Positions 1,262 to 57,183 of a stretch of DNA of 64,000 nt are shown here, piece by piece (within the stretch, counting starts at the first letter, position 1; the number at the start of each line of letters is the position of its first letter). The stretch covers positions 49,152,428 to 49,216,427 of the forward strand of contig NC_068999.1 of assembly GCF_001194135.2 (NCBI RefSeq), in the 5' to 3' direction. The notes below the pieces were generated by a model, which saw only the letters and a program-made list of their open reading frames with translations, made no database searches and had not been told where the DNA came from. The translations under genes were made by a program, and so were the position numbers. The DNA comes from Octopus bimaculoides. Taxonomy: Eukaryota.

Positions 1262-1422
1262 ATTAGGAATGAGAACCCAGGTTCGAAATTTCCCCAAGAC
1301 ACCTGATGAAGGCTAGAGAGTATATCAGCCGAAACGTCGTGTTAACAACAAACAAGATGAAAACAAATATCTGTCGAATGTAAATAATATACATAATTCC
1401 TCATCTCTTAAATATAGAACTG
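1262..1422 (+). mobile_element. Hammerhead-bearing repeat (Penelope/retrozyme-like tail), 5'-truncated copy
   Basis: About 160 bp similar to the reverse complement of 23925-24077. Confidence 0.7.
1298..1343 (+). ncRNA. Minimal type I hammerhead ribozyme motif
   Basis: Stem I GACAC/GTGTT; CTGATGA plus one extra A; stem II GGCT/AGCC; GAAA; palindromic stem III ACGT; predicted cleavage after GUC (1338). Confidence 0.75.
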
Positions 1423-17336: not shown

Positions 17337-20300
17337 NNNNNNNNNNNNNNNNNNNNNNNNNNNNNNNNNNNNNNNNNNNNNNNNNNNNNNNNNNNNNNNN
17401 NNACAAAAAGACTGTGTCCCATCTAACAGCTGTTTCTGCTGCCATTGTTCTTTGGAATTACCATTATGATGCTTAGAAAGTATTTATTATAGTTTGGTAA
17501 AAAAAAAAACTGATTTGAATCATGGAGCTTCATCAGAGTGGAAAATAAATAAATAAATAAATAAGACACAAGGAAAGAAGAAGGAAAGATTGAATATGGT
17601 GAGAGTCATGTCATGTTGCATGTAGAGCCATTGGACGATAAATAAATGACCAAAATTTAAAATAAAAGGGGTATTTGGTGGGATTGCAAATCAATTATTG
17701 TTCATCAATGTTATCTCCATTTTCTGTTTTCTTTAAATTTTGATTCCTGATAAACTCCTACTTAATTTATCGACCCCAAAAGGATGAAAAGATGAGACTG
17801 ACTTTGTCTTGCACCCTTTTGGAGGTCAATAAAAGAAGTACCAGTCAAGCACTGAAGTCGATGTACTTCAATTAACAACCTCACTCTAAAATTATTATTA
17901 GCCTTCTGCCAAAATTTGGAATCATTATTTGTATTATAAGGTCAATGGAGTGGCAGAGTTATCAAAGTGTCAGAGAAAATGCTTTGCAGTGTTTGTTCTG
18001 GTTCTTTTGGTTCTGATTTCAAATCACACTGAAATTATCTCTCATGCTTTTGAGTTTGATTAGCCACCAAACCATGGGATTGATGGAAGCAATCAACTCT
18101 TTCCCCCTTTAAAATTGCTGGCCTTGTACCCAAATCAGAGCCCGGGTGCTTGGCTTTTGAAATGTCATCAAGCATTCACAGTTCTCAACCAGTTGGGCAA
18201 TGTTGTTAATTAATCATGCATTATCTTGTAGCATCAAGATTTCAATGATGTGATTGTTTACATTTAGAATGACATTGTAAGTTAGGTGTGAGAGGTTAGA
18301 TTTGGCCAGTTTGAACATAAAACAAATAGAATATTTGGGCTGGATATGGCTGGCTTAAATACTGAAGGGTTAAACAACATATATGTATTTGCCTAAAAAG
18401 GAGAACTAGTCTACATCATTGAATGCAAATGAAGTCACAGGTGTTATACCAGAGTTTGCCTTCTCCTAGAGAGATGTCTAAGCAAAGATTAAGAGTTTTT
18501 CTCTCCTAGCTGTTGGATGACCTTTGACTCAACTGAATTCATCTGCCTTTCAACAGGTTTTGTTTCTCGTCCTGCTGAGTGTCAAACAAAATCCACACTC
18601 CTTATCAAGCAGGCTTGGTTGTGTTGCTGGTTTGGTTGCTGATGGCCTGACCATACAGCAAGTTGTACTGGGCTATGTGTTATTAATAGCACTATGAGAG
18701 ACAGTGATGTCTCTAACTTTTCAAAGAACATAAATACACTTTGTGAAGTGAAATGTCTTCAACTAGAAATCAAACTAAATTGGGAATCCTGTCTACTCAG
18801 AGCTTAACTCTAATTTACCAAAGCCTATGGGACAGGCATAAATATTACAACACCCAATAAGTAAGTGAAAATCCAGAGGAAAGGTCCCTAAGGCAGATAT
18901 ATATGGTTATACTTCACCAATATCTGGCATCCCTCGTGGCTCCATGGATGCAGTGAACATATTGACTTCTTATTCCTTTGTGGCTTATCCATAAGTACAG
19001 AGGTGATTATCACTACTTGGGATTAGGCCCCTGCTTCTGGAAACGGCCCAGGTACAGCAGAGTTGGTGAAGTTTAAGTTATTTTCTCTGCAATACCATTG
19101 GCCAATGATAAAAAAGGCTGACCAGTAAGTAGGTGACATTGTTGTTTGTAATAAATATCTTGTTCAAGCTAAAAAATAATGAACTACTTCTGTATGAATT
19201 TGATAAATGATTGTGGGGGGCATAGACTAAATTTTAAACTGTGCTGTACATTTTATTTCTTTTTTTCTAGGTGCTTGTCAGAAGGAAGAACCTGTGCTAT
19301 GACCTGCACAAATATTCTAAAACAGAGCAGTTTCCAGTGTTCAGGGGTCAGCTTCAGTCTAAACTAAAGTTAATTTATTTGCCAACGAAACTTGAAATCT
19401 AATCTCCATAAAAATAGTTAACTGTTAAAGAGACAAGAAACACCTATTTAATTACCAACCATTGGATAATTGCTGATTAAATGCAGGAGATTAATGGATA
19501 TTTGACATACTGCCAAATGTGAGAAATGCTGTCTTGTTACTTATCCAAATTCTCATATTATAACTGATTTACTATAGATGTATTAAAGATTCTCTTGCTG
19601 CAATAATCCTCTAATCTTTTACACAAGACTAGATCTAAGTGCATTATCATTTGTCAAAGTTAAGCAGTCAAACGAGCCAGAATAAAAAAAGGTGTCTTAA
19701 TTCTTCATTCTGGATAGCATCTTTTTTTCATTCTTCATTAAACCTTTCACAAGTTCATGTTGTGAACACCTTTCAGACCTACCTGATTGAAACTCCTAAA
19801 CAAACGGCAGCATCCTGACTATTTGGGGTCGAAATTTTTTTTTTTTTTGTAGCAACTAATGATGCCAACCATAGAAAGACCTGATCAACCCGAGGCTATC
19901 GTAGAAGTAGCAAGAGACACATGCCCAATGTTCTACTCAGTGGAATCAAAACCAGAACCATGTGATTATGAAGGAAGCTTCTTCACCACATAGCTATGCC
20001 AGTGTGTGTGTGTGTGTGTATCCATTCTTCATGCTGACATGGGTTGGATGGTTCATCACTGTCCAAATCATTTGTTGTGAGCTGCTATTTCCCTAGATTG
20101 ATGTTCACACCTCTTATTTGGCTTGGTTTTTTTTTCTACTGGAAACCCTTCCTACCATCAACCAATTTGTAGAATGTACCGGGTGTGTTTTCCATGGTAT
20201 CACCACAAGAGAAGTTGAATAAAAGAACCTCAGTACCCCTAGCATTCTCTACTCAGTTTATCAACTCCTTTACAAAGAGTACTAGGGACATTATATGATC

Positions 20301-21335: not shown

Positions 21336-21345
21336 NNNNNNNNNN

Positions 21346-21389
<44 letters not shown>

Positions 21390-22350
21390 CAAATGGATGT
21401 CTTATAAAACTATTCCGTATATACAATAACAGTCATACCAACAATCCAGCATACCTCCATCATGAACTGTCCCACGGGTATCACTATGGTTTCGACATCT
21501 GGGCAGTACCATTCAATCTGGCGGTGTCAGCAGCACTAAAATAAGTGTTGTTTGGGAACAAACATACTTTAGATATCACCACATTCATTCAATCTTAATT
21601 CTAGGAAGGATTAAACACTAACATTATTAATTAAACTACAACAAAGAAACACATTTACCCTATGTACAATATTACTGGTAAATAAATTCTATAAGTAAAC
21701 TTATAACTAACTCCTAAATTATCTAACTAAATAGCAGCCTAGCCCTTGAAATCCAAGCAGATAATATTCCCACCAGTCTTGTGGGTGTGTGGTAAAAAGC
21801 TTGCTTCCTAACTGCATGGCTCTCAGTTCAGTCCCACTGTGTGTCACCTTGGTCAAGTGTCATCTACTATAGTTTCGGGCCAACCAAAGCCTTGTGAGTG
21901 GATTTGGTGGATGGAAACTAAAAGAAGCCTGTCATATGTGTGTGTGTGTGTGTGTATTTGTCTCGCCACCACCCACTTACCACTTGTCAACTGGTGTTGG
22001 TGTGTTTACATCTCTGAAACTTAACAGTTTGACAAAACAGACTGATAGAATTCGTACCAGGTTTGAAAAAAGGAAAAACAAGACCAAGGTCTATTTCTTT
22101 GACTAAAATTCTTCAAGGCAGTGCTTCAGAATAGCTGCAGTCAAATAACTAAAACAATTAAAAGCTCTATATGACTAATGTAATTTTATCCAATCAACAT
22201 GCTTCTTACAATATCCAAAGGAACCCAAGATTTGAAACACCATGAATACAAAAACAAACTTGATATTTTATATTAGTAAAAAAAAAATAAAAAAAAAAAT
22301 TATGTGAAAAACAATTTATGTTACAAGTTGCTATCTCTGTAGTTTGTCAT
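21253..22350 (-). other. Candidate small spliced transcript divergent from RSF1 (exons 22350-22325, 22258-22210, 21688-21659, 21535-21455, 21270-21253)
   Basis: GT-AG sites around short non-repetitive blocks; coding status unresolved; no homolog recognised. Confidence 0.3.
21781..22164 (+). mobile_element. SINE family B1
   Basis: Head, core and tail match 11-405. Confidence 0.8.
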
Positions 22351-23924
22351 CTATCCTCAGCCGTCACAGCTCCAAACAGGAATGCTTCTAGGTTTTCTCA
22401 CGAGAAAAATTCCACACAATGTCTTCAACTTTGGATAGTATTAATGCTTTTTTCTTTTTTTGCCCTTCCCTTGTTTGTGCACCAACGTCAAAGCTGTTTA
22501 ATAAAAAAAATATACCCCCCCCCACAAAAAAAAAAGCTAAAACCCATCAGAAGTAGCTGATTTTAAACTTTATAAACACAGCCCTTTTTTTCTCTACTTT
22601 TTTTCACTCTTTATTTTTCTCTGTCTTCCTGTTATCATTCCTTTCTCTAATCTGATATTCTTTTATTCTTTAATTCTTTTTATTGGTTTCAGTCACTGGA
22701 CTGCAGATTTGTTGGAATACCATTTCAAAGGCTTTTTTTTTTAGTCGAAAATATTGACCTCAATTCTTATTTCGGTTTGAAACTTATTTTATCAAGATCT
22801 GTTTGTCAAACTACTAAGTTATGGGAGATAATGAGACACAGTGTAGACAGGGACACTACTTTTTAGATGGGTATAAACATAAACACACACATATCTATTT
22901 ACTTGCATATCTATATATCTCTTTCTTCTACCCCCCCTCTCTTGCAATACACAGCTTGGTCTGGGAATCAAAATCACTACGTCATAATTGTGAGCCCAAT
23001 GCTCTAATCAGCAAGCCATGTGCCTTCACATGTGTACACTACATCATATGAAATGTGAAGAATTCCAGACAGTACCCCACAATCTAAAACAAGTTAACTT
23101 GGTTTCATATCTCAAGTGCACATGCACAGAGCAGAATATAGTTGACTCCCTTAGTTTCATTGAGGATATATCAACCTCTCTAGAACTGGTGTGATGAAAA
23201 ATGCACCTGGTGCACTCTGTAGAGTGTGGTTGGTGATGGTTGCAAATACTCGTTAAAATCTATACAGACTTGGACTGTTGGGAGTCAGGCTTCTTGATTA
23301 TGGACATAATAGAATGTTGGTGATAAGATATAAAGTATTGATTGATTGATTGTTGAAAAATTTATTGATACCTTATTGATTTGGCCATGTTTGATTCCCC
23401 ATCATTTTAACATGTTAAAATGAGTGGATCTGTAAGGTAACATCTCTCTATGTGCTGATTCTGTATACTGGCATTATTAGAGATCCAATCAAATCATCAT
23501 CATCATCATAATGAGCAAAGAAATCACAAAAACGTATCAAAAGATACTTTGGAAAGATTGACTTGCTATTCCAAACTTTTGAAAGTGGGTATGTGAAGTT
23601 CCTACTGATCTAAAGTGTACAATGAATTTTTGTAGATGTGACACCCTAGCTAAATATCCTGTTTAGTAAGTCATTAACAAATGAAAAACAAAAATCATCA
23701 GAAATGGCAGTTCCATTCAACCCTTACATTACCATATTTCTGTTAACATACATCATCTTTGTTGTGATTAATTCTGATGTTAGCGACAACTTTAGTAAAA
23801 TTGCTTTGTCATTATTAAGCTGGTATTTGAAACATAAATTTACATGAAATTTTGATGCAAGTTATTAACCATTTAGTTTTCGGATAACTCTGTCAAATGT
23901 AATGCTTATTCAGTTATACTGTAA

Positions 23925-24300
23925 CATTTAAGAGCTGAGGAATTATGTACATTATTTGCATTTGATGGATATTTGTCCTCATCTTGTTTGTTGTTAACAC
24001 AATGTTTTGGCTGATATACCCTCCAGCCTTCATCAGGTGTCTTGGGGAAATTTCGAACCTGGGTTCTCATTCCTAAGGTATTTTTTGATGTTGTTGTTGT
24101 TGTTGTTCTTCTTCTTCTTCTTATTATTCAGGTCACTGCCTGGAATCAAACTCGGAATCTTGGGGTTAGTAACCCACGCTCTTAACCACTACGCCCACAG
24201 GCATATGGCGTAGTGGATAAGATATTATCATTATTATTCAGGTCACTGCCTGGAATCGAACTCGGAATCTTGGGGTTAGTAGCCCGCGCTCTTAACCACT
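23925..24300 (-). mobile_element. Tandem tRNA-like heads plus (TAA/GAA/CAA)n spacer plus decayed hammerhead tail
   Basis: Two copies of GTGGTTAAGAGC...GTT(C/T)GATTCCAGGCAGTGACCTGAATAATAA (A and B boxes) followed by the same tail as 1262-1422. Confidence 0.72.
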
Positions 24301-25199
24301 TACATTATAAGCCATTGTTTCTTGCTAAGAATCATCAGAGATTTTAACCCTTCCATTTTTATATTTCTTTTAAAATATACTGTCTTTATTTCAATTAATT
24401 TTGAAAATAATGGAAAGGATTAAGCAGTTGTACAATTAGATCGTTATAAATTGAATTTGCTACAAATAGAAATTCCAATCAGTGGCTTGAATTACAAATT
24501 CACTTTAAAATTATGAGTGCCAGTCTGGAAAATGGATGTTAACTGATGATGATAATGAGATGATGATGATGAAGAAATGCAAAAGATGCAGCTTTCAATT
24601 CTTGGAACACTCTTCTCTCAGTGAAATGAAACCTCAAAAAGACATGATAAATGCTGCAAAGATTATTGTTTATCTGAAGTAAGATGGAGAGATATCTAAC
24701 TCAAAAATAAGTCTCAACATGGCTGGAATTGTTGAAGGAGTCAAGGATTTAGAAGATTTAGATGCTGATTTTGATATATTAGCAAAGGTTGCATTTCAAT
24801 ACTTTCTTTCAAAATTAAGTAATTCACATAATTTTCTTTCAGCATATTTTAGCAGTGTTATTTTGTTGAAATCTTGAATTAAACAGTAATTTTCTTTTGG
24901 CAACACTGCTTGAGACATCACATGAGAAAATAAAAAGATATATTTTCTGTTCAAGTTAACCATTAATAAATTACACATGTATATGTATGTATATATATGT
25001 ATATATATATATATATATATAACACACATATGCCGACAACCTACATATCTTCATGATTCCAATACCCAATCAACAGAAATAGAAAGTGAAATTGGACTAC
25101 CGAGTCTACTAGATTAACTAACAGAGGATCAAATAAAAAAACAACACAAGCAAAAACTAAATAAAGACAAAAAAGCAACAGTTTCTAGCGTTTTAATTT

Positions 25200-26727: not shown

Positions 26728-28646
26728 TACGTGTACTCTAAGTTTATGGGAATTGCTTGTGCTTGAAGCTTTCCCTTCTATCCTTTCAACCTACTTTTTT
26801 TCTTCTTCTTCCTTCCTCCACCTCTTTAAAAATGTTGCCTTAGCTACGATCGTAGTATTAGCAAATATATGAAAAAAAGGTACTAGTCATATTTGAGAAG
26901 GTATAAAATAAAAGATGGCAGGAATGGTTGTGAAGACTAAATGGTAAATGTGCCTGAACTATTATATATATATATATATAATGTGTGTGTGTGTGGTGCT
27001 TTCTTAGGAGGATGGTAGGTTAAAAAGGAATATATATTTATGTATATATATATACACACACACTTGTAAGTGTGTAAGCTGTTGGGTTAGGAGATGTCTC
27101 AGTATTGGCTGTAGTATTGAACACACACTTCTCGCGCACCACTCGCTACCCATTTCTTGTTTAGCCGCTTCGTAAATCTCGCACTCTTCTAGTAGCCCTG
27201 CAAACACACCATAATATAACAGCGATTTTCAAATAAATCGCCATCACTGTTGTGTGAGTGTAATATATGTACGTATATAGCCAGGCGTTGGAGGGTTTTG
27301 TGTTTTATATATATATATGTATATGTATTCATATGTGTGTGTGTACGATTGTGTTTGGTGGGGAAATAAAAGACGGTGTGTGTGGGGAAAATAGATGAAC
27401 GATACCAGCCCATTTTCTTTCTATCTACCACGATGCAAAATATTTTTATTGTTCATACGACATTTTTTTCGTATCTCATTTTTGTTATTGGTTTCGCTTG
27501 AAAAATGGGGGAATTTTTTTTTTGTAAAGATAGATTTACATTTTAAAACACAGATTTCCGACAAATAGATTAAAAAAAATATTTGGATTTAGACTGATAT
27601 TTTTTTTCAATTTATATCGATTCAAGAGCGTTATGTTAATTTAATATTTTTTTTCCGTTATATTTTCCCCATTACTCCAGTTCTACTAAATTTTATTATA
27701 TTTTCTAGACTTAACTGAAAAAAAATATGTAAAATGTAAATATATTTCTGTTCTCGACTCGGCGAAACTTCCCCCTTTACCCCTCAGGCGTAAGTCAGCA
27801 ATCTACGAGGAGGTGTGTATGTGTTCTATTTCGTAGCCACTTACCACCGTGGTGTTGGGTCCAACTGCTACCACAGCTCAGAAAGATGCACATTGTATAG
27901 TGTATGTAAGTGTGTGTGTCTCTGTTTATTAGTGTTTGTTTGTTTTTCTTTCTTTTTTTTTTACTTTTGAAGGGACGTAACTCTAGATTCTGTTGCTCAA
28001 TAAACAATAAACTGTTACGTATGATGATTAATCTACCGAAATGGTTCTTTGCAACACTGTTTTTTGTTGGTCTCTCTTTCCTTCATCCCCCGATACAATC
28101 ATTATTTTGTCCCCCCCCCCCAAAAAAANNNNNNNNNNNNNNNNNNNNNNNNNNNNNNNNNNNNNNNNNNNNNNNNNNNNNNNNNNNNNNNNNNNNNNNN
28201 NNNNNNNNNNNNNNNNNNNNNNNNNNNNNNNNNNNNNNNNNNNNNNNNNNNNNNNNNNNNNNNNNNNNNNNNNNNNNNNNNNNNNNNNNNNNNNNNNNNN
28301 NNNNNNNNNNNNNNNNNNNNNNNNNNNNNNNNNNNNNNNNNNNNNNNNNNNNNNNNNNNNNNNNNNNNNNNNNNNNNNNNNNNNNNNNNNNNNNNNNNNN
28401 NNNNNNNNNNNNNNNNNNNNNNNNNNNNNNNNNNNNNNNNNNNNNNNNNNNNNNNNNNNNNNNNNNNNNNNNNNNNNNNNATATATATATATATGCGCAG
28501 GCCTGTCTGTGTGGTAGGGAGCTTGATTCCCAACCACATGGTTCAGTACCACGCAGAGGTACCTTGGCAGGTGTTTACTATAGTCTCGGGCCGATTTGAT
28601 AGACGGAAGCTGAGAGAAGCCCGTCGTATATGTGTATATGTGTGTG

Positions 28647-30676: not shown

Positions 30677-33600
30677 GGCGGCGAGCTGGCAGAACCGTTA
30701 GCACGCTGGGCAAAATGCTTAGCAGCATTTTGTCTGTCTTTGTGTTCTGAGTTCAAATTCCACCGAGGTTGACTTTCCCTTTCAACCTTTCGGGGTTGAT
30801 AAATCAAGTACCAGTGAAACACTGGGGTTGATGTAATCCACTAGTCCCCTCCCTCAAAATTTCAGGCCTTGTGTCTATAGTAGAAGGAATTGTTATTAGT
30901 TTGTCTGTTGTTGTCGATGTTGACCAAGGACATAACACGCGAGACGAAGATGGGTCATAGTGTGTGGGGGTGGTTGACCAGTCCAATGTGTGCTCAGAAG
31001 ACTCTGCTGCAAGTCAGGCGCTGGTGGTCTGCTGGAACTGAAGGCAAGGAGTTGGGGGGGGGGTCTGGGCTTTGCACAGCTCGNNNNNNNNNNGGAACTG
31101 AAGGCAAGGAGTTGGGGGGGGGGTCTGGGCTTTGCACAGCTCGTGTTTTCTCTGTGCTTCTGCTTTGGTTCGTAGAAGGTGGGACCTCTGTTGGTGCAGT
31201 TTTACCAGGCAAGGTGGTCTTGTGCTTGTGCTTTCCAGGTATCAGGGTTGATCTCAAAGCTCTTCAGTGAGGCTTTGAGTGTATCCTCAAAACACTTTGT
31301 CCTCCATGTGTGTGCTTGCCTCCTGCTAGTTCACCATAAAACAGTTTCTTTGGGGAGTCTCGTGTCACATGATGTCTAGACAAAAGTACACGTAAAAATA
31401 CTACACACATATATACATACATGCAAAAATATGCATGCACATGTATATAACAGATTTCTTTCAGTTTTCGTCTACCAGATCCACTCAGAGCTTTGGTGCT
31501 GGTGCCATGTAAAAAGCATCCAGTCCACACTGTGAAGTGGTTGACACTTTGAAGAGCATCCAGCTGTAAAAATCATGCCAAAACTGACCTCACTTGGTCC
31601 ACTCTGTAGGGTGGTTGGTGTTAGGAAGGGCATTCAGCCGTAAAAAATGATGCCAAAACACACAGTAACCTGGTGTAGTCTTCTACCTGGCTGGCTCCTG
31701 TCAAACTATCCAATCCATGCCAGCATTGAAGGTAGATGTTAAACAGTGATGATGATGGCTACGATAGAAGATACTTATCCAAGATGGCACACAGTGAGAC
31801 TGAATCCAAGTTTCTTAACATCACAGTGATGCATTCATGACCTATATTAAATTAAATTAATTATTTCTATGAAACAGCAGACTTAGAAAATAGCATACCA
31901 ATCTTCTCATGGGGAGGTTAAAAAAATTGTTAGGCTTATGTATATTGGTGAGGCCATGGATATGGTAAATTTCTTTCGGTGTCTGTTAAGTTGGATCTAG
32001 TGTTAATTCATAGAGAATGTCTTTGTTCTTTTTTTCACCTGTTTGACAGTTTACATGCTGTGGGTAAAATAACTTCTTTCCTCTGATTTCTTGATAATCA
32101 ATGCTATGTAGGGAGACCTTTTTTAGTGGGTACTGTTATCCATGTTTGGCATGTGCGTGCATACACACACACACACACACACATATGACAAGCTTCTTTT
32201 CAATTTCCTTTTTACCCTGTTATACATGTCTATTTCCTGCACTATTATTCATCTACCTTCTGTCTTCTACCTCTTGTCTCTTGCACTATTATAACCTCAT
32301 TTGCCTATTCTCTTATACCTTTTACACCTGCACTGCTTTATTATACTTCTGCCTCTTACACAACAACCACCACAATCTCCACCATTGTTGTTTTATTACC
32401 AATTTCACAATAGCGAACAAATAATGTTTTAGCCATCAGTCATTTGACTTTGGCCATGCTGGGGTACCTCCTCGAAGCCTTTTTAGTCACAAATCGTCCC
32501 CGGGACTTATTTTTCTGTAATCTTCATACTTATTCTATCGGTCTCATTGAATAGTGATAGAGAGGGTCAAAGTATGACACACTGACACACAGAAATTCGT
32601 TTTGGCATTTATTATTATAGATATATAGATGACATGACAAGCCTCTTTCACTTTCCATCTACCAGTTTCACTCACAAGGTGCTGGTCGACCAGAGGCGTT
32701 TAGTAGAAGACATTTGCTCAAGGTGCTGGTCGACCAGAGGCGTTTAATAGAAGACATTTGCCCAAGGTGCTGTACAGTAGAACTGAACCTGTCATCACAT
32801 GGTAGCAAGGAGAGCTTCTTAACCACACATCCATACCTGCACCTGTAATAAATTAGTGATTTACATGAGACAGGGACCTATAATCTAATTTCTGAATGCC
32901 ATATAAATGATTAATGTAGGTAGAGATAACAGGTGTCACATAATTCAGTGGACAAATAAGAATCAGTAGTTTGTTTTGAAGTGGAATTCTATTTTTATTT
33001 TGTTATGTTGATGGGTTTTTATTGTTCATAGGTTTTGCTAAATATTTCAGGGTTGGTCTTTATTTTTGTCAAGCAAGTTTATCTTATCAGAAATAATGTT
33101 TGAAAGGGATTATGTGTATGCATAAATCTTGTGAATATTGTATATAGGTATTGCTGGGTGCTTAAGAGCCTCACTTTGCAACCATGTGGTTTCAAGTTCA
33201 GTCCCACTGTGTGGCCCCTTGGGCAAGTGTCTTCTACTATATAGCCCAAGGCTGACCAGTGCCTTGTGAGTGAATTTATTAGACAAACTGTGTGAAAACT
33301 TGTTGTGTTTGTGTGTGTGTGTGTGTGTTTGTTCCTCTCCACCTCGACACCTGATGCTGGTTTGTTTACAACCCTCTTAATGCTGTGGTTTAGCAAAAGA
33401 GAATGATAAAATGATGATTATGATGAGGAATTTGATTTAACCCTTTCTGTTAACATAAGCTGCCTTTGTTTCAATTAATTTTTAAAATAAAGAAAAATTT
33501 AGTAAAATGACTTTCTCATTATCAAGCTGGGGGTCTGGAACAAATTAGCATAAAATTTTGATAGATTACAATTTAGATCACTTTAAAACAGCAAGTTTTC

Positions 33601-36600
33601 GTCATAAAACTTGGGGGTGGTCTTAGGCAGGCTGGAATCTAAAGGGTTAAAATCTTATGCTGTTTGACATTATATAAAATTTGTTAAAAGTACTTTGTTC
33701 CCCCAACCAATATGGCTCAATATTACTAACACAAGAATTATGTCAGAATTCAACCTTTCCTCATGACACATGATGTTATTTTATGTATTTTATTAAGAAT
33801 TACACAAGCTTTTGTGTGCAAAGGAACTTTCTTTGTTGATTGTATGTCTAATTTTCTGCGATGGGTTATTGTGATGACAATTTAAGCTAAATGGACTGTT
33901 AATTCCATTTTGTGTGTGTGTGTGTTCTTCTATGCCTCATATTTTGGATGGTGGTATATTCATTAAGTATGTTGAGGCAGATTGAAATATGTGAACCCTT
34001 TTAATATCAGTCTGCCTGAGATCACTCATACGAAAAGTGTTTGTTTTTAAATTAAAAAATTTCAACTAAAGTCTCATTATATTTCATCCTTTAGCTTATC
34101 CAGCTAAAATATTCCACTTGTTTTATGTTCAAACTGGCAAAATTCAGCTTCTCACACCTACTCTAATATATTCTAAAAATATACAATCATATCATTGAAA
34201 TCTCAAAGCTACAAGATAATACCTGATTAAATTCAAAACATTGGGAATAAATAATTATTACCTTTGATTGAATAATGTGAATGCTAAAGGGTTAATATGA
34301 ATAATAGCATAAAGTTCCAGTTAGTCAGTACCGGTAAAATGATAATATTTAGAATTTCAACTATTTTAGTAAAACCCTTTCAAAATATGAATATGGTTGA
34401 AAAATAAATTGAAATATAGAAACAGCCTACCTGTTAGAAATATAGCCGTGAATGGGTTGAAGTGGAGAGTATAAATTTGAAATTAATAGTTCAGAAAACC
34501 AGTCAGTCATCATCATCATCACATTCATCATCATCATCATTTAACATCTGTTTCTCGATACTGGCATGGGTTAGATGGATTGAGAGGAACCAACAAGCTG
34601 CAGGATTGCAGTGAGCTCTGATGTCAGGTTTGGCATAGTTTCTATGGCTGGATCCCCTTCCTAATGCCAACCACTTTACAGTGTGTATACTTCCTTTGTT
34701 GATGTTCAATGTCCACAGTCAGTTCTGTTTGAAAAAATATTAAAAGAAAATTAGCCCATCCGACACGCACGTAGTCGATTGACTAAATGTCTTGGAGCAA
34801 TTCCTAACTTCAGTACACCGGATAATGTAATGCATCAATCTAGTCACCAAAGTCCACTGCAGGCAGTGTTCTTTTGTTTTGGATTTGTACTCTGGCACTT
34901 TAAGCGTTTTATATCAAGCTTTCAGTTCTGTCCATGCAGACAGAAGTACATAAATGGTTTCTTTTTTTCTTTTTATCTCTCACAATCATATTTGTGATAT
35001 AGAAGTAGCTAGATAGATACTTGTGGGTTAACTACACAAACTCAACACACAGGATATTAGAAGGTTTGTGTTTTATCTTTTACTTGTTTCGGATGACCAT
35101 TTCGGGGCACTGCTGTGAAGGGTTCAGTCGAACAAATCAACCCCGGTACTTATTTTCCTTTTTAAGTCTGGTATGACTACCGATCCTATTGGTCTCTTTT
35201 GCCAAACCCCTAAATTATGGGGATGTAAACGAACCAATGACAGTTGTGGAGTGTGTGTGTGTTGGGGGCGAAGGGGAGAAATAAACACGCACACACACAC
35301 ACACACACACACAAGGGGCATGCACATAGTTTCTGTATACCAAATTCACCCACGAGGCATTGGTTGGCCCTGGATTATAGTAGAAGACACTTGCCGAAAA
35401 TGCTGTACAGTGGGACCGAACCTGAAACCATTTGATTGCAAAGTGAGCTTTCTAACCATACAAATATCCATGTGCATAAAGCAATTTATTGATAGTCAAA
35501 GATATGTAAATGTTTACCCAGTATCTAACTTAACTGCAGTATTTCCATAGAATACACAGACACAGTGTAAGCAGGAGCATGAACAGAGGTGGGGACACTC
35601 TACTCTGTTTGCAGATTGTGTGATCAGAATTAAAGTAATAATTAATCTTTTAGCATTCAGATTAATCTGTCAAACGAAACACTTATTTATTTACATTGCT
35701 TTGAATTAATCATGCATTGTCACATAGCTTTGAGATTTTGATTATGTGGTTGTTTATTTTTAGAATGACAGTATAGGGTAGGTGAGAGAGGCTGGCTCTG
35801 GCCAGTTTGAACCTAAAGCAGGTAGAATATTTGGGGCTGATGTGACTGGTTTAACCCTTTAACATTTAAACTGGCCATATCCGGCCAAAATATTGTACCT
35901 GTTTTATGTTCAGAGTGGTCAGATCTGGCCTCTCACACCAACCCTACAATATCATTTTAAAAATTAACAGTTTCCTCATCAAAATTGCAAAGCTACAAGA
36001 TAAAGGAAGATTAATTCAAAAGAAAGTGAATGTTGGAGGGCTAAATACTAAAATAAATCACCCTATAAAATTATAATTGTTGTGCAAATTAATGTCTTGG
36101 ATTATTGAGTGTATGGTCATGAACCATTAGACTAGCCATTATGCTGTACCATCATTGTCTAGGTACGTGATTCCTTTTGGTTCAGTCTGCATGGCTGACA
36201 TAATAGTTCCCTTTACACTTTGTGGTTTGAATGGTGAGCAGTAGAAGGACATCCTACTGTTAACCTTAATTGTTTAAATGGTTTGCAAAAGAAGAAAAAG
36301 AAACATTTGGAAGTCCTTCACTAGCATGTTAGCAGGAAAATTCTTCAAGCAACCAAGGAAGCTTCTGTGCAGTCATTCAACCTTCTAGAAATAGCAGCCA
36401 AATCACACTGATTTAGAAAAGGAGGACACATTAGAGAATGTGCTCCTGGGTGCAGTGTACTCAGGAAAATGAGGGATGGTCATGGTTGAATTGCTTTTAA
36501 ACCTGTCTGCCCAAAGCATTTTCATAAGATTGTCCTAAATGTTCATGCTTGTTTTTAGATTTTTAGCGAGCCCTTGTTTTATACATTCTGAGTAATATAT

Positions 36601-39600
36601 AAGGCTTTTCTCTCACAAGTCCTAAGTTATTGTGATGGTTGACAAAAATTGGGAATATGTTATCATATATGATGCAGAGATGCCAGGGAAATATGTCTTG
36701 TGTATTACAGTATCACATGTGATACACAGGTGAAATGTTAATTATATAAATTTATATTTGATCAGACATATTGCAAAAAAAAAAAACCTTCCAAAATCTA
36801 TTTCGCGAACTGATATATTCAATAAGGCTTAATTAAGATGAAAAGAAACAATAAGAAACATACCGTATTTATATATATATATATATATATTAAAAAAAAA
36901 CCTTTAAAAAAAATTTAATTTCCTGCAAAATATAGCTTATTTATTACCACTATCTTCCATTTCATCACCATGACAAATATCACAACCAACCAGCAGCATT
37001 TTGTATTGTGTTTCTTTTTCCTATTTGTGTGGATTATAATAGCAGGTTTGACTGGCTGGCTGTGTTTGGCATCACTCCAAAATACTCATCATAGCTTATA
37101 GAAGTTTGGTTTGGTTTGGATATTGTTGTGGGAGCAAACTTAGCGCATCTGTACCATTATCACGCATGTAATTTGGTTAGAACTGAGAGTTTCATGGCTA
37201 GTTCTGTTTTTAATGAGGACATTACTGAAACTAATTTAGTGTGGTGTACCATGCCTTCATTTATTTAAGACAACTACCTAACCCTCACCCTAACCCTAAC
37301 CCTCACCTGAAATGAATCTTTGCTGCCCTCTAATTTTCTTTTACTTGCTTCAGTCATTGGATTGTGGCCATGCTGGGGCACTGCCTTGAAGGGTTTATAT
37401 AGTCCAGTGGTTCTCAACCATTTTTTATCTATGGACCCCTTTGATTACTGTTTTACCCTGGTGGACCCCCATAACCTATAAAACTAGTTTTATAGGCACT
37501 TCTTTGAAAATTCCCATTTTGTTTTTCACACATTAACTCGAGTGGTTTGAACTCTGTAAAATGTTAGAGAGAGAAACCAAGCTGTTCCTTTCGGTAAATA
37601 CATCTGAATCAGAATTTTTTCATGGATCCTTAACATACTACTGTGTGCACCCAATTTACTGCTTTGCTTGCATGTCCCCACCAAACCTTACACGGACCCT
37701 CAGGGGTGATATCAACCCCGGTTGAGAATCACTAGTTTAGTCAAACAGCTTGACCCCCCCCCCCCCNNNNNNNNNNNNNNNNNNCCCCACCATTATTTTT
37801 CTTTTTAAGCCTGGTATTCTATCAGTCTCTTTTGCTGAACCACTAGGTTATGGGGATGTAAACAGACCAACACCAGTTGTCAAGCACGGGGGATAAACAC
37901 AGACACACACACACGTAATTGATTTCACAATAGCAAACCTACAAAAGATTCTTCTAGTACATCTGCTGCCTTGAATAATTTCTGTCTTGCAGTACTTACC
38001 TTCACTTTCAAAGTGTAATTTGAGAAGAGCCTCGGCTTCACATGCAATACAGAGCTGGTGACGATATGTGCTGTTGACTTCTTGATCAATTGTCTGACAC
38101 TTTATTCCTCATCTCCTTCCTTCCTTCCTTTCTTTGTTTCCTCTCTCTTGAGATCGATACAGGTGAAATTATCATAGCTTGAAGAGCTGCCCAACAGAAG
38201 CAAATTAATAATTTGTAGTAGGGCACTAGTGTACAGAGCATTCATTGACAATTTTTTTTTCCTGTTTTAGGTTTTTAAATTTATGGCTTTAAATTAAAAT
38301 TTGTCTTGATATTGACTTCTCATGTGTCCTACACCAACGTTTCATCATTTTCAACGTCCTCTTTTCCATGCTTGCATGGCTCAGACAGAATTTATTTAGG
38401 CTGATTTTCTATGGTCAGATGCCCTTCATCCTTTACCTGTTTCCAAACAAGATAATATTTCCCCATGGACAGACATGTTTTCAGAGTATTGGAAATGAGT
38501 GACACTGCTTGTATGACAATCACACTATATTCTCCTGTTTCGTACTAATTATCCTTATTCCTTGACCAATAACTTGGAATTTTGCATGTAAGAATTTAAT
38601 AACACAAATTTTCTTCCAATTTTTTTTGGTTGTCTGTGACACATTAACTCACTGGTTATATGCAATTTAGTAAGCACTCAATGAACATATATATACTGCT
38701 GAGACCCCCCTTTGGCCATGACTGACCATGGGATTGCACCTAGAAAGTTACCCTCCCAGGCACAAGTCCAGGCAAAGTTGTTTATGGAAGACCAGCAGTC
38801 ACCCATGCATACTGGCCTCCCCTCTCCGCGCCACCAGTGTTATCCAAGGGAAAGGCAAAGGCCGATACAGCTTGGCACCTGTGTGTTGTGTGTGTAGTAC
38901 CGCCTGACTGGCTCCCATGCTAGTGGTACGTAAAAAGCACCGTTCAAGCGTGGTTGATACCAGTGGCCTGTTTCAGTTCTTTCTGCTGAGTGCAAATCCT
39001 GTGCAGGTCAAGTTTATGTTTTAACCTTTCATTGTTAATCAATAAAGTACCAATCCTGGACAGTGGATTCATGGAATGTCAGAGTGTTGGGCAAATACAC
39101 CCTGTGGCATCTGTTTCAACTCAGCACATTCTTTCACTGGTTTAAAAAGAAAAAATAACCTCTAAATAAATGGTGATAGGCTTATGAAATTCTTAAGTAC
39201 CCAAGTATATCTGCTGACCATTCTCACTGTCAGAAAGCTGACAGGAAAATTGCAAGGGTACTATGCAGCTGTTTGCATACAATGAATGATAATTCTCTCT
39301 GTATTTCTCTTTCTCTCCGTCTCTCTCTCTCTACACACACACATACACACACTATGGACTCTCCTGTTGAAGACAATATATGAGCGTTCAGCTTTTGTTG
39401 AATGACCTGCACAAATGATTTGTTTACAGTGATCAAATGTTTGCTCACTCCCTCCATCAAATTGGCATTACCTGAACATGTACACAGTATACCATGTATC
39501 AGGTGACAAAGTGATTGCAGAGCAATGTGAGATGAAGTGTTTTGCTCTAGTACATAATGCACCACCCAGTCTACGAATTGAAACCAGATTCTCACAGTTG

Positions 39601-42600
39601 TGAATGCTATACCCTAATGACTAGGCCATGTGCCCTCATCATCATTTAATCTCTCATTTTCCATGCTTTGGTATAGTTTCTATAGATGGATGCCTTTCCT
39701 AATGCCACCCACTTTACAGAGTGTGCTGGGTGCTTTTTTTCATGGTACCAGCCATCACTAAGTGAGGTCACCAAGCAGTTCAGTTGCTAGGCAAGACCCC
39801 TAAAGTGAGTGGGGTACAGTATTGAGGGATGTGAAAGCATGAGAGAGGGACAGGAACAGGTGTCTTGCTGAAAAAGTGAATACATAGCTTCCTCAGGCGA
39901 AGATAAAAGTTGAATATGAGAGAAAGAGAATTGAATTAGAGGGAGAGAAAAGACAGGTGGGTAAGTGGGTAGGTAAGTGCACAAGAGTGTGATGAACCTT
40001 TGTGACTAATGAAGAAATGATTATCATTAGCATTATCACTCTATTGAGTTCAGGTTATTTTAATTTTACATAATTTTGTATCACTTGGTTGTAGGGGATT
40101 GATGACTGGGCTTTCACAAGAGTTTCCTCATGTACCTGATACACAAGGCTTTTTTTTTGTGGGATTATTTCATGGAATGGGTCCTTATTTATTTAATGAA
40201 AAATTTATTGCTTGTTAACATTGGAACTGAATGGTACTTATTCTATCAGTTTCTTTTGCCAAACCACTAAGTTACAGGGGACATAAACAAACCATTACCA
40301 GTTGTCAAGTGATAGTAGTGGAGGAGACTAACAGAAAGACACACACACACACACCCATACATTTAAACATATATACACTGGGCTTCTACACAGTTTCCCT
40401 CTATCACATTGACTCACAAGGCATTGATCAGTCTGGGGCTATAGTGGAAGATACTTGTCCAAGATGCCCAAACAGTGGGTTTGAACCCAAAACCACATGG
40501 TTGCAAAGTGAACTTCTTAACCATACAGCCATGTGTGCACCTGTTAGTCAATTCTAATTATATTAACATGCAAATAAGCTTAACAAACAGTAGATCCGTT
40601 ATCCTTCTTAACTATTATTTTGTAAGCAGTTTTCTTTCTGTTATCTTTCTCATTATTTATCTTTCTATTTCTCTACTTCAAATTACTAATTTTTATTGTG
40701 TGGCTAAGTCTTGGAAAATTTAATTAAAATTCCATTGATTTAAAAAAAAAAAAATTATTATTCAATCGTGTTTCTTTTTGAAGTTTAAATTGTCTTTTTA
40801 CTGTTAGGGTTTACTATTTCTTGTTTCTCCCCCCAAACTTAGATGTTACTTATATTCCCAGTTGTATTCAGAAAAAGAGCCATTAATGTAAATGATTTCA
40901 CTGCAAAAGTTTTCGATGTAAACGAGTTTTAGATAAAGCACCAGTTTGAAATAGATAAGAGAAATTGGCCCCACTGATGGAACATGATTGCATTTTCTAT
41001 GTTAGCTTGGTCCAATATATTTGTTATATTGTATTGAATGTTGCCAATCAGCCCATTTAATTTCTCTCCGATCAAGTTACCAATCAATAGAGCTTCTATG
41101 TGGTAACTTGTCCTCTTCAGTCTAGCAGCTGAATTTCTATCATGCATTTTCCTACTCTCAGAAGACCTTAAGAGAGCTATGCTCTCGAGAGATCACTATG
41201 GTTTATACCAGTTTGTTAGACATCACACTTCTTTGTCAGCCTCTGGGAGAGAAAAATCAATATGATCATTGATTGTATGAGTAATATGTTTCAATTTTTA
41301 ACCCTTTAGCGTTTAAGCTGGCCAAAATATTTTACCTGTTTTATGCTCAAACTGGCCAGATCTGGCACTTCATACCTACTTGTTTTATGTTCTAACCAGC
41401 CATATCCAGCCTATCACACCTACCCTTCAATTCCATTCTAAAAAGAAACAATCACATCAAAATATCAAAGCTATGAGACAATATATGATTAATTAAAAAC
41501 AATGAATGAAAGAGCAATACAACTGACAGAACATCTGAATGCTAAATGGTTAAACCGGTTATATCTGGCCCCAAATATCGTACCTGTTTTATGTTCAAAC
41601 CAGCCAGATCCAGCCTCTCACACCTACTCGACGTTTGTTCCTCTGAACATAAGCAGTCACATCATTGAAATCTCAAAGCTGTGAGGTAAGGCAAGATTAA
41701 TTCAAAACAATGTGAATGAATAAACATTATATTTGACAGAGAAATCTGAATGTTAAAGGGTTAAGGGAGTTTGTCTGCTATTTCTGACATATCAAGTCTC
41801 CGCAAAGAGGCCACCTCTTTGCTTGGTCACTCTATGTTGATATTTCTCTTTTCCGATGTTTGTTTCTTTTTTCTTTATAATCCAATATCTTTGGCTGGTT
41901 GTATAAACTTCCTGTTATACATTAAGAAAAATGTAGTGAATTAGCCAACATATATATTGTTGAGTCAGAATTAATATATTTTATACAATAATGTGCATGT
42001 TTCATATTTTCATATTTTTGAATGCTTATATTTTGCTAAGAACAGTGTTTATCTTTCAGTAATTTTTAAAAGATACGTTCAATCTTTGCTATTCTGCTTT
42101 ATTTGGTTGTTTTTCATTTGATAATCCATCTTGTGCTATCAATTTATCTGGAGCTTAATAAATTAGATTGGATTGAAACCCAAGCATGCATGTTTCACTA
42201 GTCAACAGAACGAGGCAGATAACATGAAAGAGAGGGGGGAGGGAAGAAAGAAGAGGGAAAGAGGGAGACAGAAAAGGAATAAGTGAACTGTAGTGGTTTG
42301 TGATTGGCTTTTAATCACTTCACTGAGAAGAGATCTGTTTGACATAATATGGAGATTGAGGAAGCTGGTTTCTGTAAATTTTAAGGTCGACGATGTCCTA
42401 GCAGTTGGATTTTCATATAGACATTCCCACACATTATAGAAATGTGTTTCTGGAAATCTTATTTTTCATTGGCTGCCTTGTGGGGTGGCAGTCAATGAGA
42501 AAATACATTTTGTGTTATAGAATTCCACTTTACAAAAGATCTTCAAGAGCACAGTGCTTCTTGTAACACACAGTAAGGACATCTTATTTCTAGCAATACT

Positions 42601-53862: not shown

Positions 53863-53896
<34 letters not shown>

Positions 53897-56619: not shown

Positions 56620-57183
56620 NNNNNNNNNNCCAATATGTGTTTTCTGTTAAATTATTCTTTTACTAATCTCAGTCACTGGATTGTGGCCATGCTGGGGCAA
56701 ATCCTTCAAAGAAGCTAGTTAGTAATATTGACTGTATTACTTAAGTGGTATTCATTTTATTAAAAAGATGAAAGGGAAAATCAACTTGGACAGGCTTTGA
56801 ATTCTGATGACGAAGGGGCAGACCACAAGCTGTTTTGTTTGACACACTCCCAAATCTGCCAAACATTCCCCACTGGAGTTGATAAAATTAACTACCAGTC
56901 TTGCACTGAGGGTGATTCAATTACTTACATGCCCGTCTGTCTAAATTTGCAAAAGGGCTAGTTATGTATTGGCTATATCTCCCTCATCACTTTGCAGCCT
57001 TGTGCCAGTGTTTGAAGCCACTACTACTACTACTACGACGCCCAATCTTCCAAGTTCTTTTACAGGGCTTAAAAAACTGAAAAACGTGTGTGAATCTGAG
57101 AGGGGAATATGTTTAATAAAATCATAATTAACCGATCTTTCTGTATTTTCTGTTACCCAAAACTAGGAATTCTTCAGCTGTTC

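What the first reader, a model, noticed from the sequence alone, without database searches (positions are those of the whole stretch)
23925..24300. tRNA-headed, hammerhead-bearing retroelement with tandem heads and fold-back 5' hairpin
Read on the - strand: tRNA-like head (intact B box GTTCGATTC, 24261-24253); then CTTATCCACTACGCC-(11 nt)-GGCGTAGTGGTTAAG, a 15 bp near-perfect inverted copy of the element's own 5' end; a second head; a (TAA/GAA/CAA)n spacer; then the hammerhead tail. Established: partial tandem repeats, inverted 5' segments and minimal hammerheads are hallmarks of Penelope-like elements, and Schistosoma Sm-alpha combines Pol III boxes with a hammerhead. Inference: a non-autonomous Pol III-driven element mobilised by Penelope-like machinery, possibly through self-cleaved or circular RNA monomers. 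I do not know of a description of this family in cephalopods, but have not searched. Best candidate for an undescribed system in this window.
Basis: partly seen in the sequence, partly recalled or inferred. Interest (0 to 1): 0.85.

Follow-up and report, generated by a model that had tools for sequence, protein, structure and literature searches.

The report
Two SINEs beside a dead hammerhead repeat
This stretch of octopus DNA holds two copies of a short tRNA-like SINE next to one decayed copy of a Penelope-type hammerhead repeat; both kinds are known, and nothing here shows that they form one new composite element.

Summary
The sequence features are real. On the - strand there are two 70-nt heads (96% identical) with Pol III A/B boxes at tRNA-like spacing. 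A 16-nt inverted copy of the head's 5' end forms a hairpin. A (TAA/GAA/CAA)n run follows, then a 151-nt tail with a hammerhead-like core.

The composite reading is not supported.
- The tail recurs at window 1263-1413 (91% identical) with no head upstream.
- Both copies start at the same base, so the tail behaves as a discrete unit.
- Each head ends in its own (NAA)n tail, as a complete simple SINE does.
- The repeated unit here is the head, not the part that carries the hammerhead. That is not Penelope pLTR architecture.

The tail family does carry a Penelope-type minimal type I hammerhead, and copy 1298-1343 is intact. The copy in the finding is catalytically dead: G12A and G16.2A, both CpG decay. 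Both hammerheads are single, so neither locus can make self-cleaved or circular monomers.

Most likely these are (TAA)n-tailed SINEs plus a solo Penelope-derived hammerhead repeat, brought together by insertion at microsatellites. No other octopus DNA could be reached, so genome-wide linkage is untested. I give a true composite family about 12%. Interest is low.

The parts
24221..24303 (-). SINE copy 1. It is 5'-truncated and starts about (T)GTAAGTGG. It has a B box GTTCGATTCC at 24261-24252 and ends ...GGCAGTGACC + TGAATAATAATGATAATATC, its own (TAA)n-type tail.
   Evidence: It keeps all 4 CpGs of the shared 70 nt.
24180..24222 (-). Fold-back hairpin. The arm TCTTATCCACTACGCC (24222-24207) is an inverted copy of the SINE 5' region GGCGTAGTGGTTAAGA (24195-24180). 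The loop is ATATGCCTGTG.
   Evidence: 16 nt, 94% complementary. (-23.9 kcal/mol, z = -4.7). The weak mir-885 hit is this hairpin.
24131..24202 (-). SINE copy 2 head, apparently full length: GCCTGTG-GGCGTAGTGG... with an A box GGGCGTAGTGG at 24196-24186 and a B box GTTTGATTCC at 24151-24142.
   Evidence: It has lost 2 CpGs relative to head 1.
24077..24130 (-). Simple-repeat 3' tail of SINE copy 2: TGAA(TAA)2(GAA)5(CAA)6CATCAAAAAATACC.
23912..24076 (-). Tail copy A, a solo hammerhead-bearing short repeat. BLAST homology to copy B covers 24076-23926, with a probable extension to about 23912.
   Evidence: The translated peptide is 85% identical to Octopus bimaculoides A0A0L8FV75.
23996..24041 (-). 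Degenerate hammerhead in copy A. Helix I is GACAC (24041-24037) paired with GUGUU (24000-23996). CUGAUGA is at 24036-24030, with an extra A at 24029. Helix II is GGCUG/CAGCC. The core reads AAAA where GAAA is required (24008-24005; G12A at 24008), and 24003 is A where G16.2 is required.
   Evidence: All three core changes relative to copy B lie at CpG sites.
1263..1413 (+). Tail copy B, the sister copy of the hammerhead repeat, 91% identical. It has no SINE head upstream; a (TG)n-like microsatellite lies there instead.
1298..1343 (+). Intact minimal type I hammerhead in copy B: GACAC-CUGAUGA-A-GGCU...AGCC-GAAA-C-G-U-C|GUGUU.
   Evidence: the only descriptor match in 64 kb, against 0.017 expected; helices I and II appear in the minimum-free-energy fold.
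23865..23912 (+). 5' end of a piggyBac-like MITE (TTAA-CCATTTAG...), cut off where tail copy A ends.
   Evidence: Continuation of this MITE on the far side of the cluster is not significant.

Best explanation
The region is a patch of independent retroposon insertions in repeat-dense octopus non-coding DNA. It is not one element.

(1) Two copies of a short 'simple' tRNA-derived SINE. Each has internal Pol III A and B boxes and ends in its own (TAA)n-type trinucleotide-repeat tail. Copy 1 is 5'-truncated. Copy 2 is full length and carries a 16-nt fold-back of its own 5' end. Such SINEs are transcribed by Pol III and copied into the genome by a LINE reverse transcriptase. I infer a Dong/R4-type LINE, which targets (TAA)n repeats. 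A new copy would then land in the tail of an older one, which gives head-to-tail 'tandem heads'.

(2) One solo copy of a roughly 150-165-nt repeat that carries a Penelope-type minimal type I hammerhead. It is either a discrete non-autonomous Penelope derivative (a retrozyme-like monomer) or a pLTR-end fragment. It would be mobilised by Penelope RT/GIY-YIG machinery, which favours microsatellites. That preference would explain why both copies in the window abut simple repeats, and why this one abuts a SINE tail.

The hammerhead of this copy has been killed by CpG decay (G12A, G16.2A). It is also single, and this class of ribozyme needs two copies to form helix III. The locus is therefore inert.

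Shown: the sequence features, the second head-less tail, the intact and the dead cores, and the CpG pattern. Inferred: the identity of the mobilising enzymes, the order of insertions, and the origin of the hairpin.
For: The tail recurs without a head, and both copies start at TTAGGAATG.

The heads share ...GACCTGAATAATAA and then diverge into different simple repeats. Each is therefore a complete SINE with a variable tail.

The A/B-box-spaced pattern matches 4 times against 0.05 expected. It also picks up two other SINE families in the window, so Pol III SINEs are dense here.

Copy B is the only match to a min-HHR descriptor in 64 kb, against 0.017 expected. [quoted passage not shown] Its helix I is 5 bp, within the 4-5 bp range that paper describes.

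The literature fits this reading:
- Most such motifs are dispersed single copies (PMC4209133; PMC7761336).
- Solo monomers of Penelope-derived retrozymes are common (bioRxiv 10.64898/2026.07.22.740005).
- Octopus vulgaris has 11.6% SINEs, about 900 unclassified SINE families, 30 recently active Penelope families, and Dong-R4 as the LINE group with most recent insertions (PMC13282606).
- Dong targets (TAA)n in molluscs (PMC7998251).
- Penelope-like elements (PLEs) are biased to microsatellites (PMC8557442).

CpG retention differs between the parts: head 1 keeps 4 of 4, tail A keeps 1 of the 5 in tail B (Fisher p = 0.04). The window's CpG observed/expected ratio is 0.45. This points to different ages. 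Neighbouring unrelated repeats lying within 60 nt of each other are common in this window.
Against: There are only two tails and two heads to compare. No other cephalopod DNA could be retrieved.

Heads and tail share a strand. No Pol III terminator (TTTT) occurs until 23800, so a head-driven transcript could read through the tail.

No clean target-site duplications separate the units. The candidates (AATAYCTTA at 24226-24218 and 24082-74; ATAATG; TATAA) are short, AT-rich and mutually inconsistent with the 16-nt hairpin.

The CpG argument assumes the differences arose after insertion rather than in the source copies. Assigning the mobilising enzymes (Dong/R4, Penelope) rests on literature analogy. 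No octopus LINE or Penelope consensus was compared.
Confidence: 0.72

Rival explanations
1. Head, simple-repeat linker and hammerhead tail form one amplified composite SINE family, a cephalopod analogue of Schistosoma Sm-alpha. It would be transcribed by Pol III from the head and mobilised through its Penelope-derived 3' tail.
For: Head and tail have the same orientation and lie 54 nt apart. There is no TTTT between head and tail, so Pol III read-through is possible. The tail has a Penelope-type hammerhead. Retrozymes are reported to lack their own promoters (PMC7761336), so acquiring a Pol III head would be advantageous. A composite could have been built from the free-standing tail element, which would also explain the shared 5' boundary.
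Against: The only other tail in the window has no head. Head 1 has no tail of its own, and both heads end in their own variable (NAA)n tails. A long variable microsatellite inside a SINE body is unusual. CpG decay differs between head 1 and tail. Only one tail-derived ORF exists among 5.8 billion database proteins, and no ORF combining head and tail was found; this is weak evidence because octopus coverage is poor.
Confidence: 0.12
2. A one-off chimeric retrocopy. A reverse transcriptase began on the hammerhead-repeat RNA and reached its 5' end. It then jumped to the 3' tail of a SINE RNA, folded back briefly at that RNA's 5' end, and jumped to a second SINE RNA. The result is a single insertion that is not a family.
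For: The tail begins exactly at its family 5' end. Each SINE retains a complete 3' tail. Only the 5'-most unit is truncated. A fold-back sits at an RNA 5' end. The tail's 3' end abuts the broken MITE. End-to-end template jumping by non-LTR reverse transcriptases is established knowledge, recalled here and not tested.
Against: No single pair of target-site duplications brackets the whole block. Continuation of the MITE on the far side is not significant. The unequal CpG decay of the parts would then have to come from the source copies.
Confidence: 0.1
3. The hammerhead resemblance in the tail is chance. The tail would be an ordinary unclassified repeat with no ribozyme ancestry.
For: Rfam models do not call it, even for the intact copy at E<=10. 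The loose pattern CTGANGA...GAAA...GTH occurs 6 times against 3.9 expected.
Against: A full structural descriptor (helix I >=4 bp, core, helix II >=4 bp, GAAA, A15.1/U16.1, H17) matches once, against 0.017 expected. That match also shows traits not required by the descriptor: the bulged nucleotide, the G10.1-C11.1 pair and the palindromic ACGU. Minimal variants of this kind lack the helix III hairpin (PMC7761336), and I expect the Rfam models to require one; the models themselves were not inspected.
Confidence: 0.04

Closest known systems
Minimal type I hammerheads of Penelope-like elements, and their dispersed solo copies (Cervera & de la Pena 2014, PMC4209133)
   Same: The core is CUGAUGA...GAAA. 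[quoted passage not shown] There is no helix III hairpin, only a palindromic ACGU that can pair between two copies. Helix I is short (5 bp). The motif occurs as a single dispersed copy.
   Different: Helix II is 4-5 bp with a 10-11-nt loop, not the 7-8 bp described for Schistosoma families. No flanking RT/GIY-YIG ORF or second pLTR is present. Homology to an octopus Penelope pLTR was not tested.
Metazoan non-LTR retrozymes (Cervera & de la Pena 2020, PMC7229834; Li et al. 2026 bioRxiv 10.64898/2026.07.22.740005)
   Same: A short (about 150-165 nt), AT-rich, non-coding repeat with a type I hammerhead. Solo monomers are a recognised state. Penelope elements are the proposed mobilisers.
   Different: Retrozymes are defined by tandem arrays that yield circRNAs. 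Both copies here are single, and one is catalytically dead. The unit is somewhat shorter than the monomer sizes quoted in the retrieved papers (about 300 bp).
Schistosoma Sm-alpha SINE-like element (Pol III boxes plus hammerhead; Ferbeyre et al. 1998, recalled from memory and cited in PMC4209133)
   Same: Pol III-type boxes and a hammerhead lie on the same strand within about 200 nt.
   Different: In Sm-alpha both features belong to one repeated unit. Here the two modules occur separately in the same window and are divided by a SINE's own microsatellite tail.
Simple tRNA-derived SINEs with trinucleotide-repeat tails, and Dong/R4 LINEs that target (TAA)n (PMC7998251; octopus SINE/LINE census in PMC13282606)
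   Same: A and B boxes lie at tRNA spacing. The body is about 80 nt. The (TAA)n-type 3' tail is variable. Copies are stacked head to tail.
   Different: No cloverleaf is detectable. The partner LINE is unidentified. A 16-nt fold-back at the 5' junction is not a standard SINE feature.

Membership tests
Hammerhead ribozyme, minimal type I (Penelope type) | Catalytic core C3-U4-G5-A6-N7-G8-A9 ... G12-A13-A14, then A15.1 ... U16.1-H17 | tested here: not met
   For the copy in the finding, G12 is A (24008) and G16.2 is A (24003). The feature is met in sister copy B at 1298-1343.
Hammerhead ribozyme, minimal type I (Penelope type) | Helices I and II flank the core, with an unpaired nucleotide before helix II, a G10.1-C11.1 pair and a palindromic 15.2/16.2 | tested here: met
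   Helix I is GACAC/GUGUU (5 bp). An extra A precedes helix II, which is GGCU(G)/(C)AGCC. ACGU is present in copy B. The criteria come from PMC4209133. In copy A the palindrome is broken (ACAU).
Hammerhead ribozyme, minimal type I (Penelope type) | Match to curated Rfam hammerhead covariance models | tested here: not met
   No hammerhead hit at the gathering threshold or at E<=10 for either copy. This is probably expected for variants without a helix III hairpin.
Hammerhead ribozyme, minimal type I (Penelope type) | Self-cleavage activity (as a dimer) | not testable with these tools
   Needs in vitro transcription of dimeric constructs.
Penelope-like element insertion (pLTR architecture) | Direct repeats (pLTRs), each carrying the hammerhead, flanking or preceding an RT + GIY-YIG ORF | tested here: not met
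   There is one hammerhead per locus. The duplicated unit is the head, which has no hammerhead. Self-BLAST shows no extended homology around either tail. No RT-like ORF of 90 aa or more was recognised by eye in the window. The Pfam scan failed on stop codons and was not repeated, so decayed RT remnants were not excluded.
Penelope-like element insertion (pLTR architecture) | An adjacent inverted copy that is 5'-truncated, so that it retains the element's 3' end | tested here: not met
   The inverted piece is 16 nt of the head's 5' end. The definition is from PMC8557442.
Penelope-like element insertion (pLTR architecture) | Sequence homology of the tail to a pLTR of an autonomous Penelope element of the same genome | not testable with these tools
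   No octopus Penelope consensus, Repbase or Dfam library was reachable.
Non-LTR retrozyme | Tandem (two or more) head-to-tail repeats, each with a type I hammerhead | tested here: not met
   Both tail copies are single. They would count only as 'solo monomers' in the sense.
Non-LTR retrozyme | Expression as small circular RNAs | not testable with these tools
   Needs RNA data (RNase R treatment, divergent RT-PCR).
tRNA-derived SINE | Internal Pol III A box and B box at tRNA-like spacing | tested here: met
   GGGCGTAGTGG, then 33 nt, then AGTT(C/T)GATTCC. The spaced pattern matches 4 times against 0.05 expected.
tRNA-derived SINE | Recognisable tRNA homology or cloverleaf | tested here: not met
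   ARAGORN finds 0 tRNAs. Rfam gives no tRNA hit at E<=10. Folding is no better than shuffles. A resemblance to tRNA-Ser(GCU) is recalled from memory only.
tRNA-derived SINE | A- or simple-repeat-rich 3' tail and multiple dispersed copies with target-site duplications | tested here: inconclusive
   Variable (NAA)n tails are present on both copies. Only two copies, adjacent to each other, were seen. The target-site duplications are ambiguous.
Composite Pol III-head + hammerhead SINE (Sm-alpha-like) | Head and hammerhead linked within one repeated unit in most copies | tested here: not met
   One of the two tails in the window lacks any head, and one of the two heads has no tail directly downstream. 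A genome-wide test was not possible.

The most novel reading that the evidence does not exclude
The head-linker-tail arrangement is a member, or the founding locus, of a real composite family. That would be a Pol III-transcribed, tRNA-headed SINE that rides on Penelope machinery through a hammerhead-bearing 3' module: a cephalopod counterpart of Schistosoma Sm-alpha. It would give promoter-less Penelope-derived retrozyme-like repeats their own promoter.
Probability: 0.12. Interest if true: 0.55.

Novelty: new member of a known kind. Interest (0 to 1): 0.2.

Why it matters
As found, it matters little. It is a routine patch of nested retroposons in a genome that is about two-thirds repeats.

It does add two small annotation points. 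First, an octopus repeat family carries a textbook Penelope-type minimal hammerhead that Rfam models miss. Second, a short (TAA)n-tailed tRNA-like SINE stacks head to tail.

If the composite reading proved true genome-wide, it would be a second, independent case of a Pol III SINE head fused to a Penelope-type ribozyme module. Retrozymes are reported to lack promoters, so that case would bear on how they get transcribed.

Tried and rejected
1. Rfam at gathering score on the whole window, and at E<=10 on both tail regions, gave no tRNA or hammerhead. I wrote my own descriptor instead.

2. Attempts to fetch more octopus copies all failed:
- The tail peptide against 5.8 billion proteins gave one hit, O. 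bimaculoides A0A0L8FV75. Its contig is not on record.
- Exact look-ups of two window ORFs found nothing.
- A 68-aa antisense ORF spanning tail, spacer and head, searched against 1.84 billion representatives, found nothing.
- 22-23-mers of tail and head found nothing in metagenome or genome collections, and the tail 23-mer found nothing in viral contigs.

3. I tried to reach orthologous loci through the neighbouring large exon (52302-56285).

4. I proposed that the whole cluster sits inside one piggyBac-like MITE, which would favour a single insertion. The left flank is a significant MITE 5' end. The right-flank continuation is not better than shuffles, so I withdrew the idea.

5. Candidate target-site duplications (AATAYCTTA, ATAATG, TATAA) are short and AT-rich. 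One conflicts with the 16-nt hairpin and another overlaps tail homology. I did not use them to decide.

6. An 11-mer, GACACCTGATG, is shared with one copy of the abundant SINE at 33346. It occurs in that single copy only, so I judged it coincidence.

7. Sequence-string searches of the literature and of supplements gave no hits.

8. A Pfam scan of six-frame translations around the tails was rejected by the tool because of stop codons. I did not pursue it, because self-BLAST already shows no extended homology around either tail.

Full report
**What is there**

Read on the - strand, the region holds the following, in order.
- A 5'-truncated head, from about 24303 to 24241. It ends ...GGCAGTGACC and is followed by TGAATAATAATGATAATATC.
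- TCTTATCCACTACGCC, an inverted copy of the head's 5' end.
- An 11-nt loop, ATATGCCTGTG.
- A second, apparently full-length head (24202-24131).
- TGAA(TAA)2(GAA)5(CAA)6CATCAAAAAATACC (24130-24077).
- A 151-nt repeat (24076-23926) that contains CUGAUGA.

The two heads are 70 nt long, 96% identical and 110 nt apart. The inverted repeat is 16 nt, 94% complementary, with an 11-nt loop. As RNA it folds at -23.9 kcal/mol, z = -4.7. The trinucleotide runs are confirmed.

**How tRNA-like is the head?**

ARAGORN finds no tRNA in the window. Rfam finds nothing at gathering score and no tRNA at E<=10 on 23700-24500. The heads fold no better than shuffles.

What does hold is the Pol III promoter geometry. 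GGGCGTAGTGG matches the A box. After 33 nt comes AGTT(C/T)GATTCC, which matches the B box. The spaced pattern AGTGG-N28-38-GTTYGANNCC matches 4 times in the window against 0.05 expected. The other two matches are different SINE families, at 40443 and 45776. The head is best called a tRNA-derived SINE head on promoter evidence alone. A resemblance to tRNA-Ser(GCU) is my recollection and was not tested.

**Is there a hammerhead?**

Self-BLAST finds a second copy of the tail at 1263-1413 (+), 91% identical over 151 nt.

That copy reads GACAC-CUGAUGA-A-GGCU(A)...(C)AGCC-GAAA-C-G-U-C|GUGUU. I wrote a structural descriptor requiring helix I of at least 4 bp, the core, an optional bulge, helix II of at least 4 bp, GAA, A15.1, a short inner helix III, U16.1, H17 and closure of helix I. 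It matches only this site in 64 kb. Second-order Markov shuffles give 0.017 matches per window. Helices I and II appear in the minimum-free-energy fold.

Beyond the descriptor, the site shows traits that Cervera and de la Pena give as diagnostic of Penelope min-HHRs (PMC4209133):
- a G10.1-C11.1 pair;
- a palindromic 15.2/16.2 (ACGU);
- a short helix I.

Rfam does not call it even at E<=10. That is probably expected for variants that lack a helix III hairpin.

The copy in the finding is different. It reads CAGCC-AAAA-C-A-U-U, which is G12A, G16.2A and C17U. All three changes sit at CpG sites of copy B. The window's CpG observed/expected ratio is 0.45, so this is ordinary methylation-type decay. 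G12 is the general base of the ribozyme (established knowledge), so this copy is dead.

Minimal hammerheads of this class need two copies to build helix III. Both copies in the window are single. Neither locus can yield self-cleaved or circular monomers.

**Are head and tail one element?**

The evidence available points against it.
- Copy B has no head. Its upstream flank is a (TG)n-like microsatellite.
- Copies A and B begin at the same nucleotide, TTAGGAATG. That is what a discrete unit gives, not random 5' truncation of a longer composite.
- The two heads share ...GACCTGAATAATAA and then run into different simple repeats.
- Head 1 has no hammerhead tail of its own. The tandem is therefore not a partial tandem of a hammerhead-bearing unit.
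- The inverted piece is the 5' end of the head. Penelope insertions instead carry inverted copies that are 5'-truncated (PMC8557442).
- CpG retention differs. Head 1 keeps 4 of 4. Head 2 keeps 2 of those 4. Tail A keeps 1 of the 5 in tail B. For head 1 against tail A, Fisher p = 0.04. This suggests different ages, with the caveat that source copies may already have differed.

Two points favour linkage. The parts share a strand. There is also no TTTT on the - strand until 23800, so a head-initiated Pol III transcript could run through the tail.

**Context**

A peptide translated from the tail has one relative among 5.8 billion proteins. It is a 51-aa 'uncharacterized protein' of Octopus bimaculoides, 85% identical. 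The host is therefore an octopus, and the tail family exists elsewhere in that genus.

The window is a dense repeat mosaic. It contains the following:
- an abundant SINE with 13 BLAST matches;
- a third tRNA-like SINE;
- piggyBac-like MITEs with TTAA-CCCTTT termini.

Unrelated neighbouring repeats within 60 nt of each other are common.

The tail's 3' end abuts the broken 5' end of one such MITE (23865-23912). I first thought the MITE resumed beyond head 1, which would imply a single insertion. The right-flank match is no better than shuffles, so I withdrew that claim.

**Likely mechanism**

O. vulgaris is reported to have 11.6% SINEs, about 900 unclassified SINE families, 30 recently active Penelope families, and Dong-R4 as the LINE group with most recent insertions (PMC13282606).

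Dong elements target (TAA)n repeats in molluscs (PMC7998251). A (TAA)n-tailed SINE mobilised by such a LINE would land in the tails of earlier copies, which gives stacked heads.

Penelope-like elements are biased to microsatellites (PMC8557442). Both tail copies here abut simple repeats. These links are inference. No octopus LINE or Penelope consensus could be compared.

The hairpin is most simply a fold-back made at the 5' end during second-strand synthesis. This is also inference.

**What is known**

Dispersed single minimal type I hammerheads, interpreted as truncated Penelope copies, are described in thousands per genome in many metazoans (PMC4209133; PMC7761336). Short Penelope-derived non-autonomous hammerhead repeats (non-LTR retrozymes), including solo monomers, are also described (PMC7229834; bioRxiv 10.64898/2026.07.22.740005). 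Rfam-type hammerheads have been counted in a squid genome (PMC6962438). I found no description of these two octopus families by sequence string. Repbase, Dfam and SINEBase were not available.

**Limits**

No further cephalopod DNA could be reached. The linkage test rests on two tails and two heads in one window.

My probabilities are as follows:
- independent or nested insertions, 72%;
- a true composite family, 12%;
- a one-off template-switch chimera, 10%;
- a chance hammerhead resemblance, 4%.

**Verdict**

The finding consists of new members of known kinds, and its interest is low (0.2).

Noticed in passing
window 1263-1413 (+), hammerhead at 1298-1343: An intact Penelope-type minimal hammerhead in a solo repeat next to a (TG)n microsatellite. 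Rfam misses it. A 13-nt direct repeat, TGTGTGTACATGT, lies at 1232-1244 and 1488-1500 and may bracket a longer (about 245 nt) insertion.
   Followed up: partly
window 23865-23912, 34172-34295, 35642-35764, 41297-41775; also 23716-23856, 24343-24416, 33444-33562: Two families of piggyBac-like MITEs with TTAA-CCCTTT(A/T) termini. One copy (41775-41297) is a tandem of two units. They are nested with SINEs throughout the window.
   Followed up: partly
window 33140-33300 and 12 further BLAST matches (e.g. 259-370, 21825-21905, 35323-35447, 40388-40532, 46978-47108): An abundant SINE family (...GGTGCTTAAGAGCCTCACTTTGCAACCATGTGGTTTCAAGTTCAGTCCCACTG...), usually followed by (TG)n. It gives recurrent spurious ORFs ('[19 protein letters not shown]').
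   Followed up: no
window 45764-46070 (+): A third tRNA-like SINE with A and B boxes and a conserved-looking core (...GTCGTTCAGTTGATCGGATCAACTGGAACCCTTGTTGTTGTAACCGAC...). ARAGORN does not call it a tRNA.
   Followed up: no
window 52302-56285 (+), 57747-58088 (+), about 59835-59960 (+): A 1327-aa open exon, rich in K, E and S, followed by an acidic exon and a PHD-finger-like exon ([12 protein letters not shown]) that is cut by an assembly gap. It is probably a chromatin-protein gene on the + strand. Two word-indexed protein searches found no relative.
   Followed up: partly
window 17337-17402, 21336-21345, 28129-28480, 31084-31093, 37767-37784, 42680-42704, 56620-56629, 59962-60134: Eight runs of N (664 bases in total). 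These are assembly gaps, mostly next to microsatellites.
   Followed up: no
window 33346-33356 (+): The 11-mer GACACCTGATG (helix I plus the start of the hammerhead core) also occurs in one copy of the abundant SINE. I judged this coincidence, because other copies lack it.
   Followed up: partly
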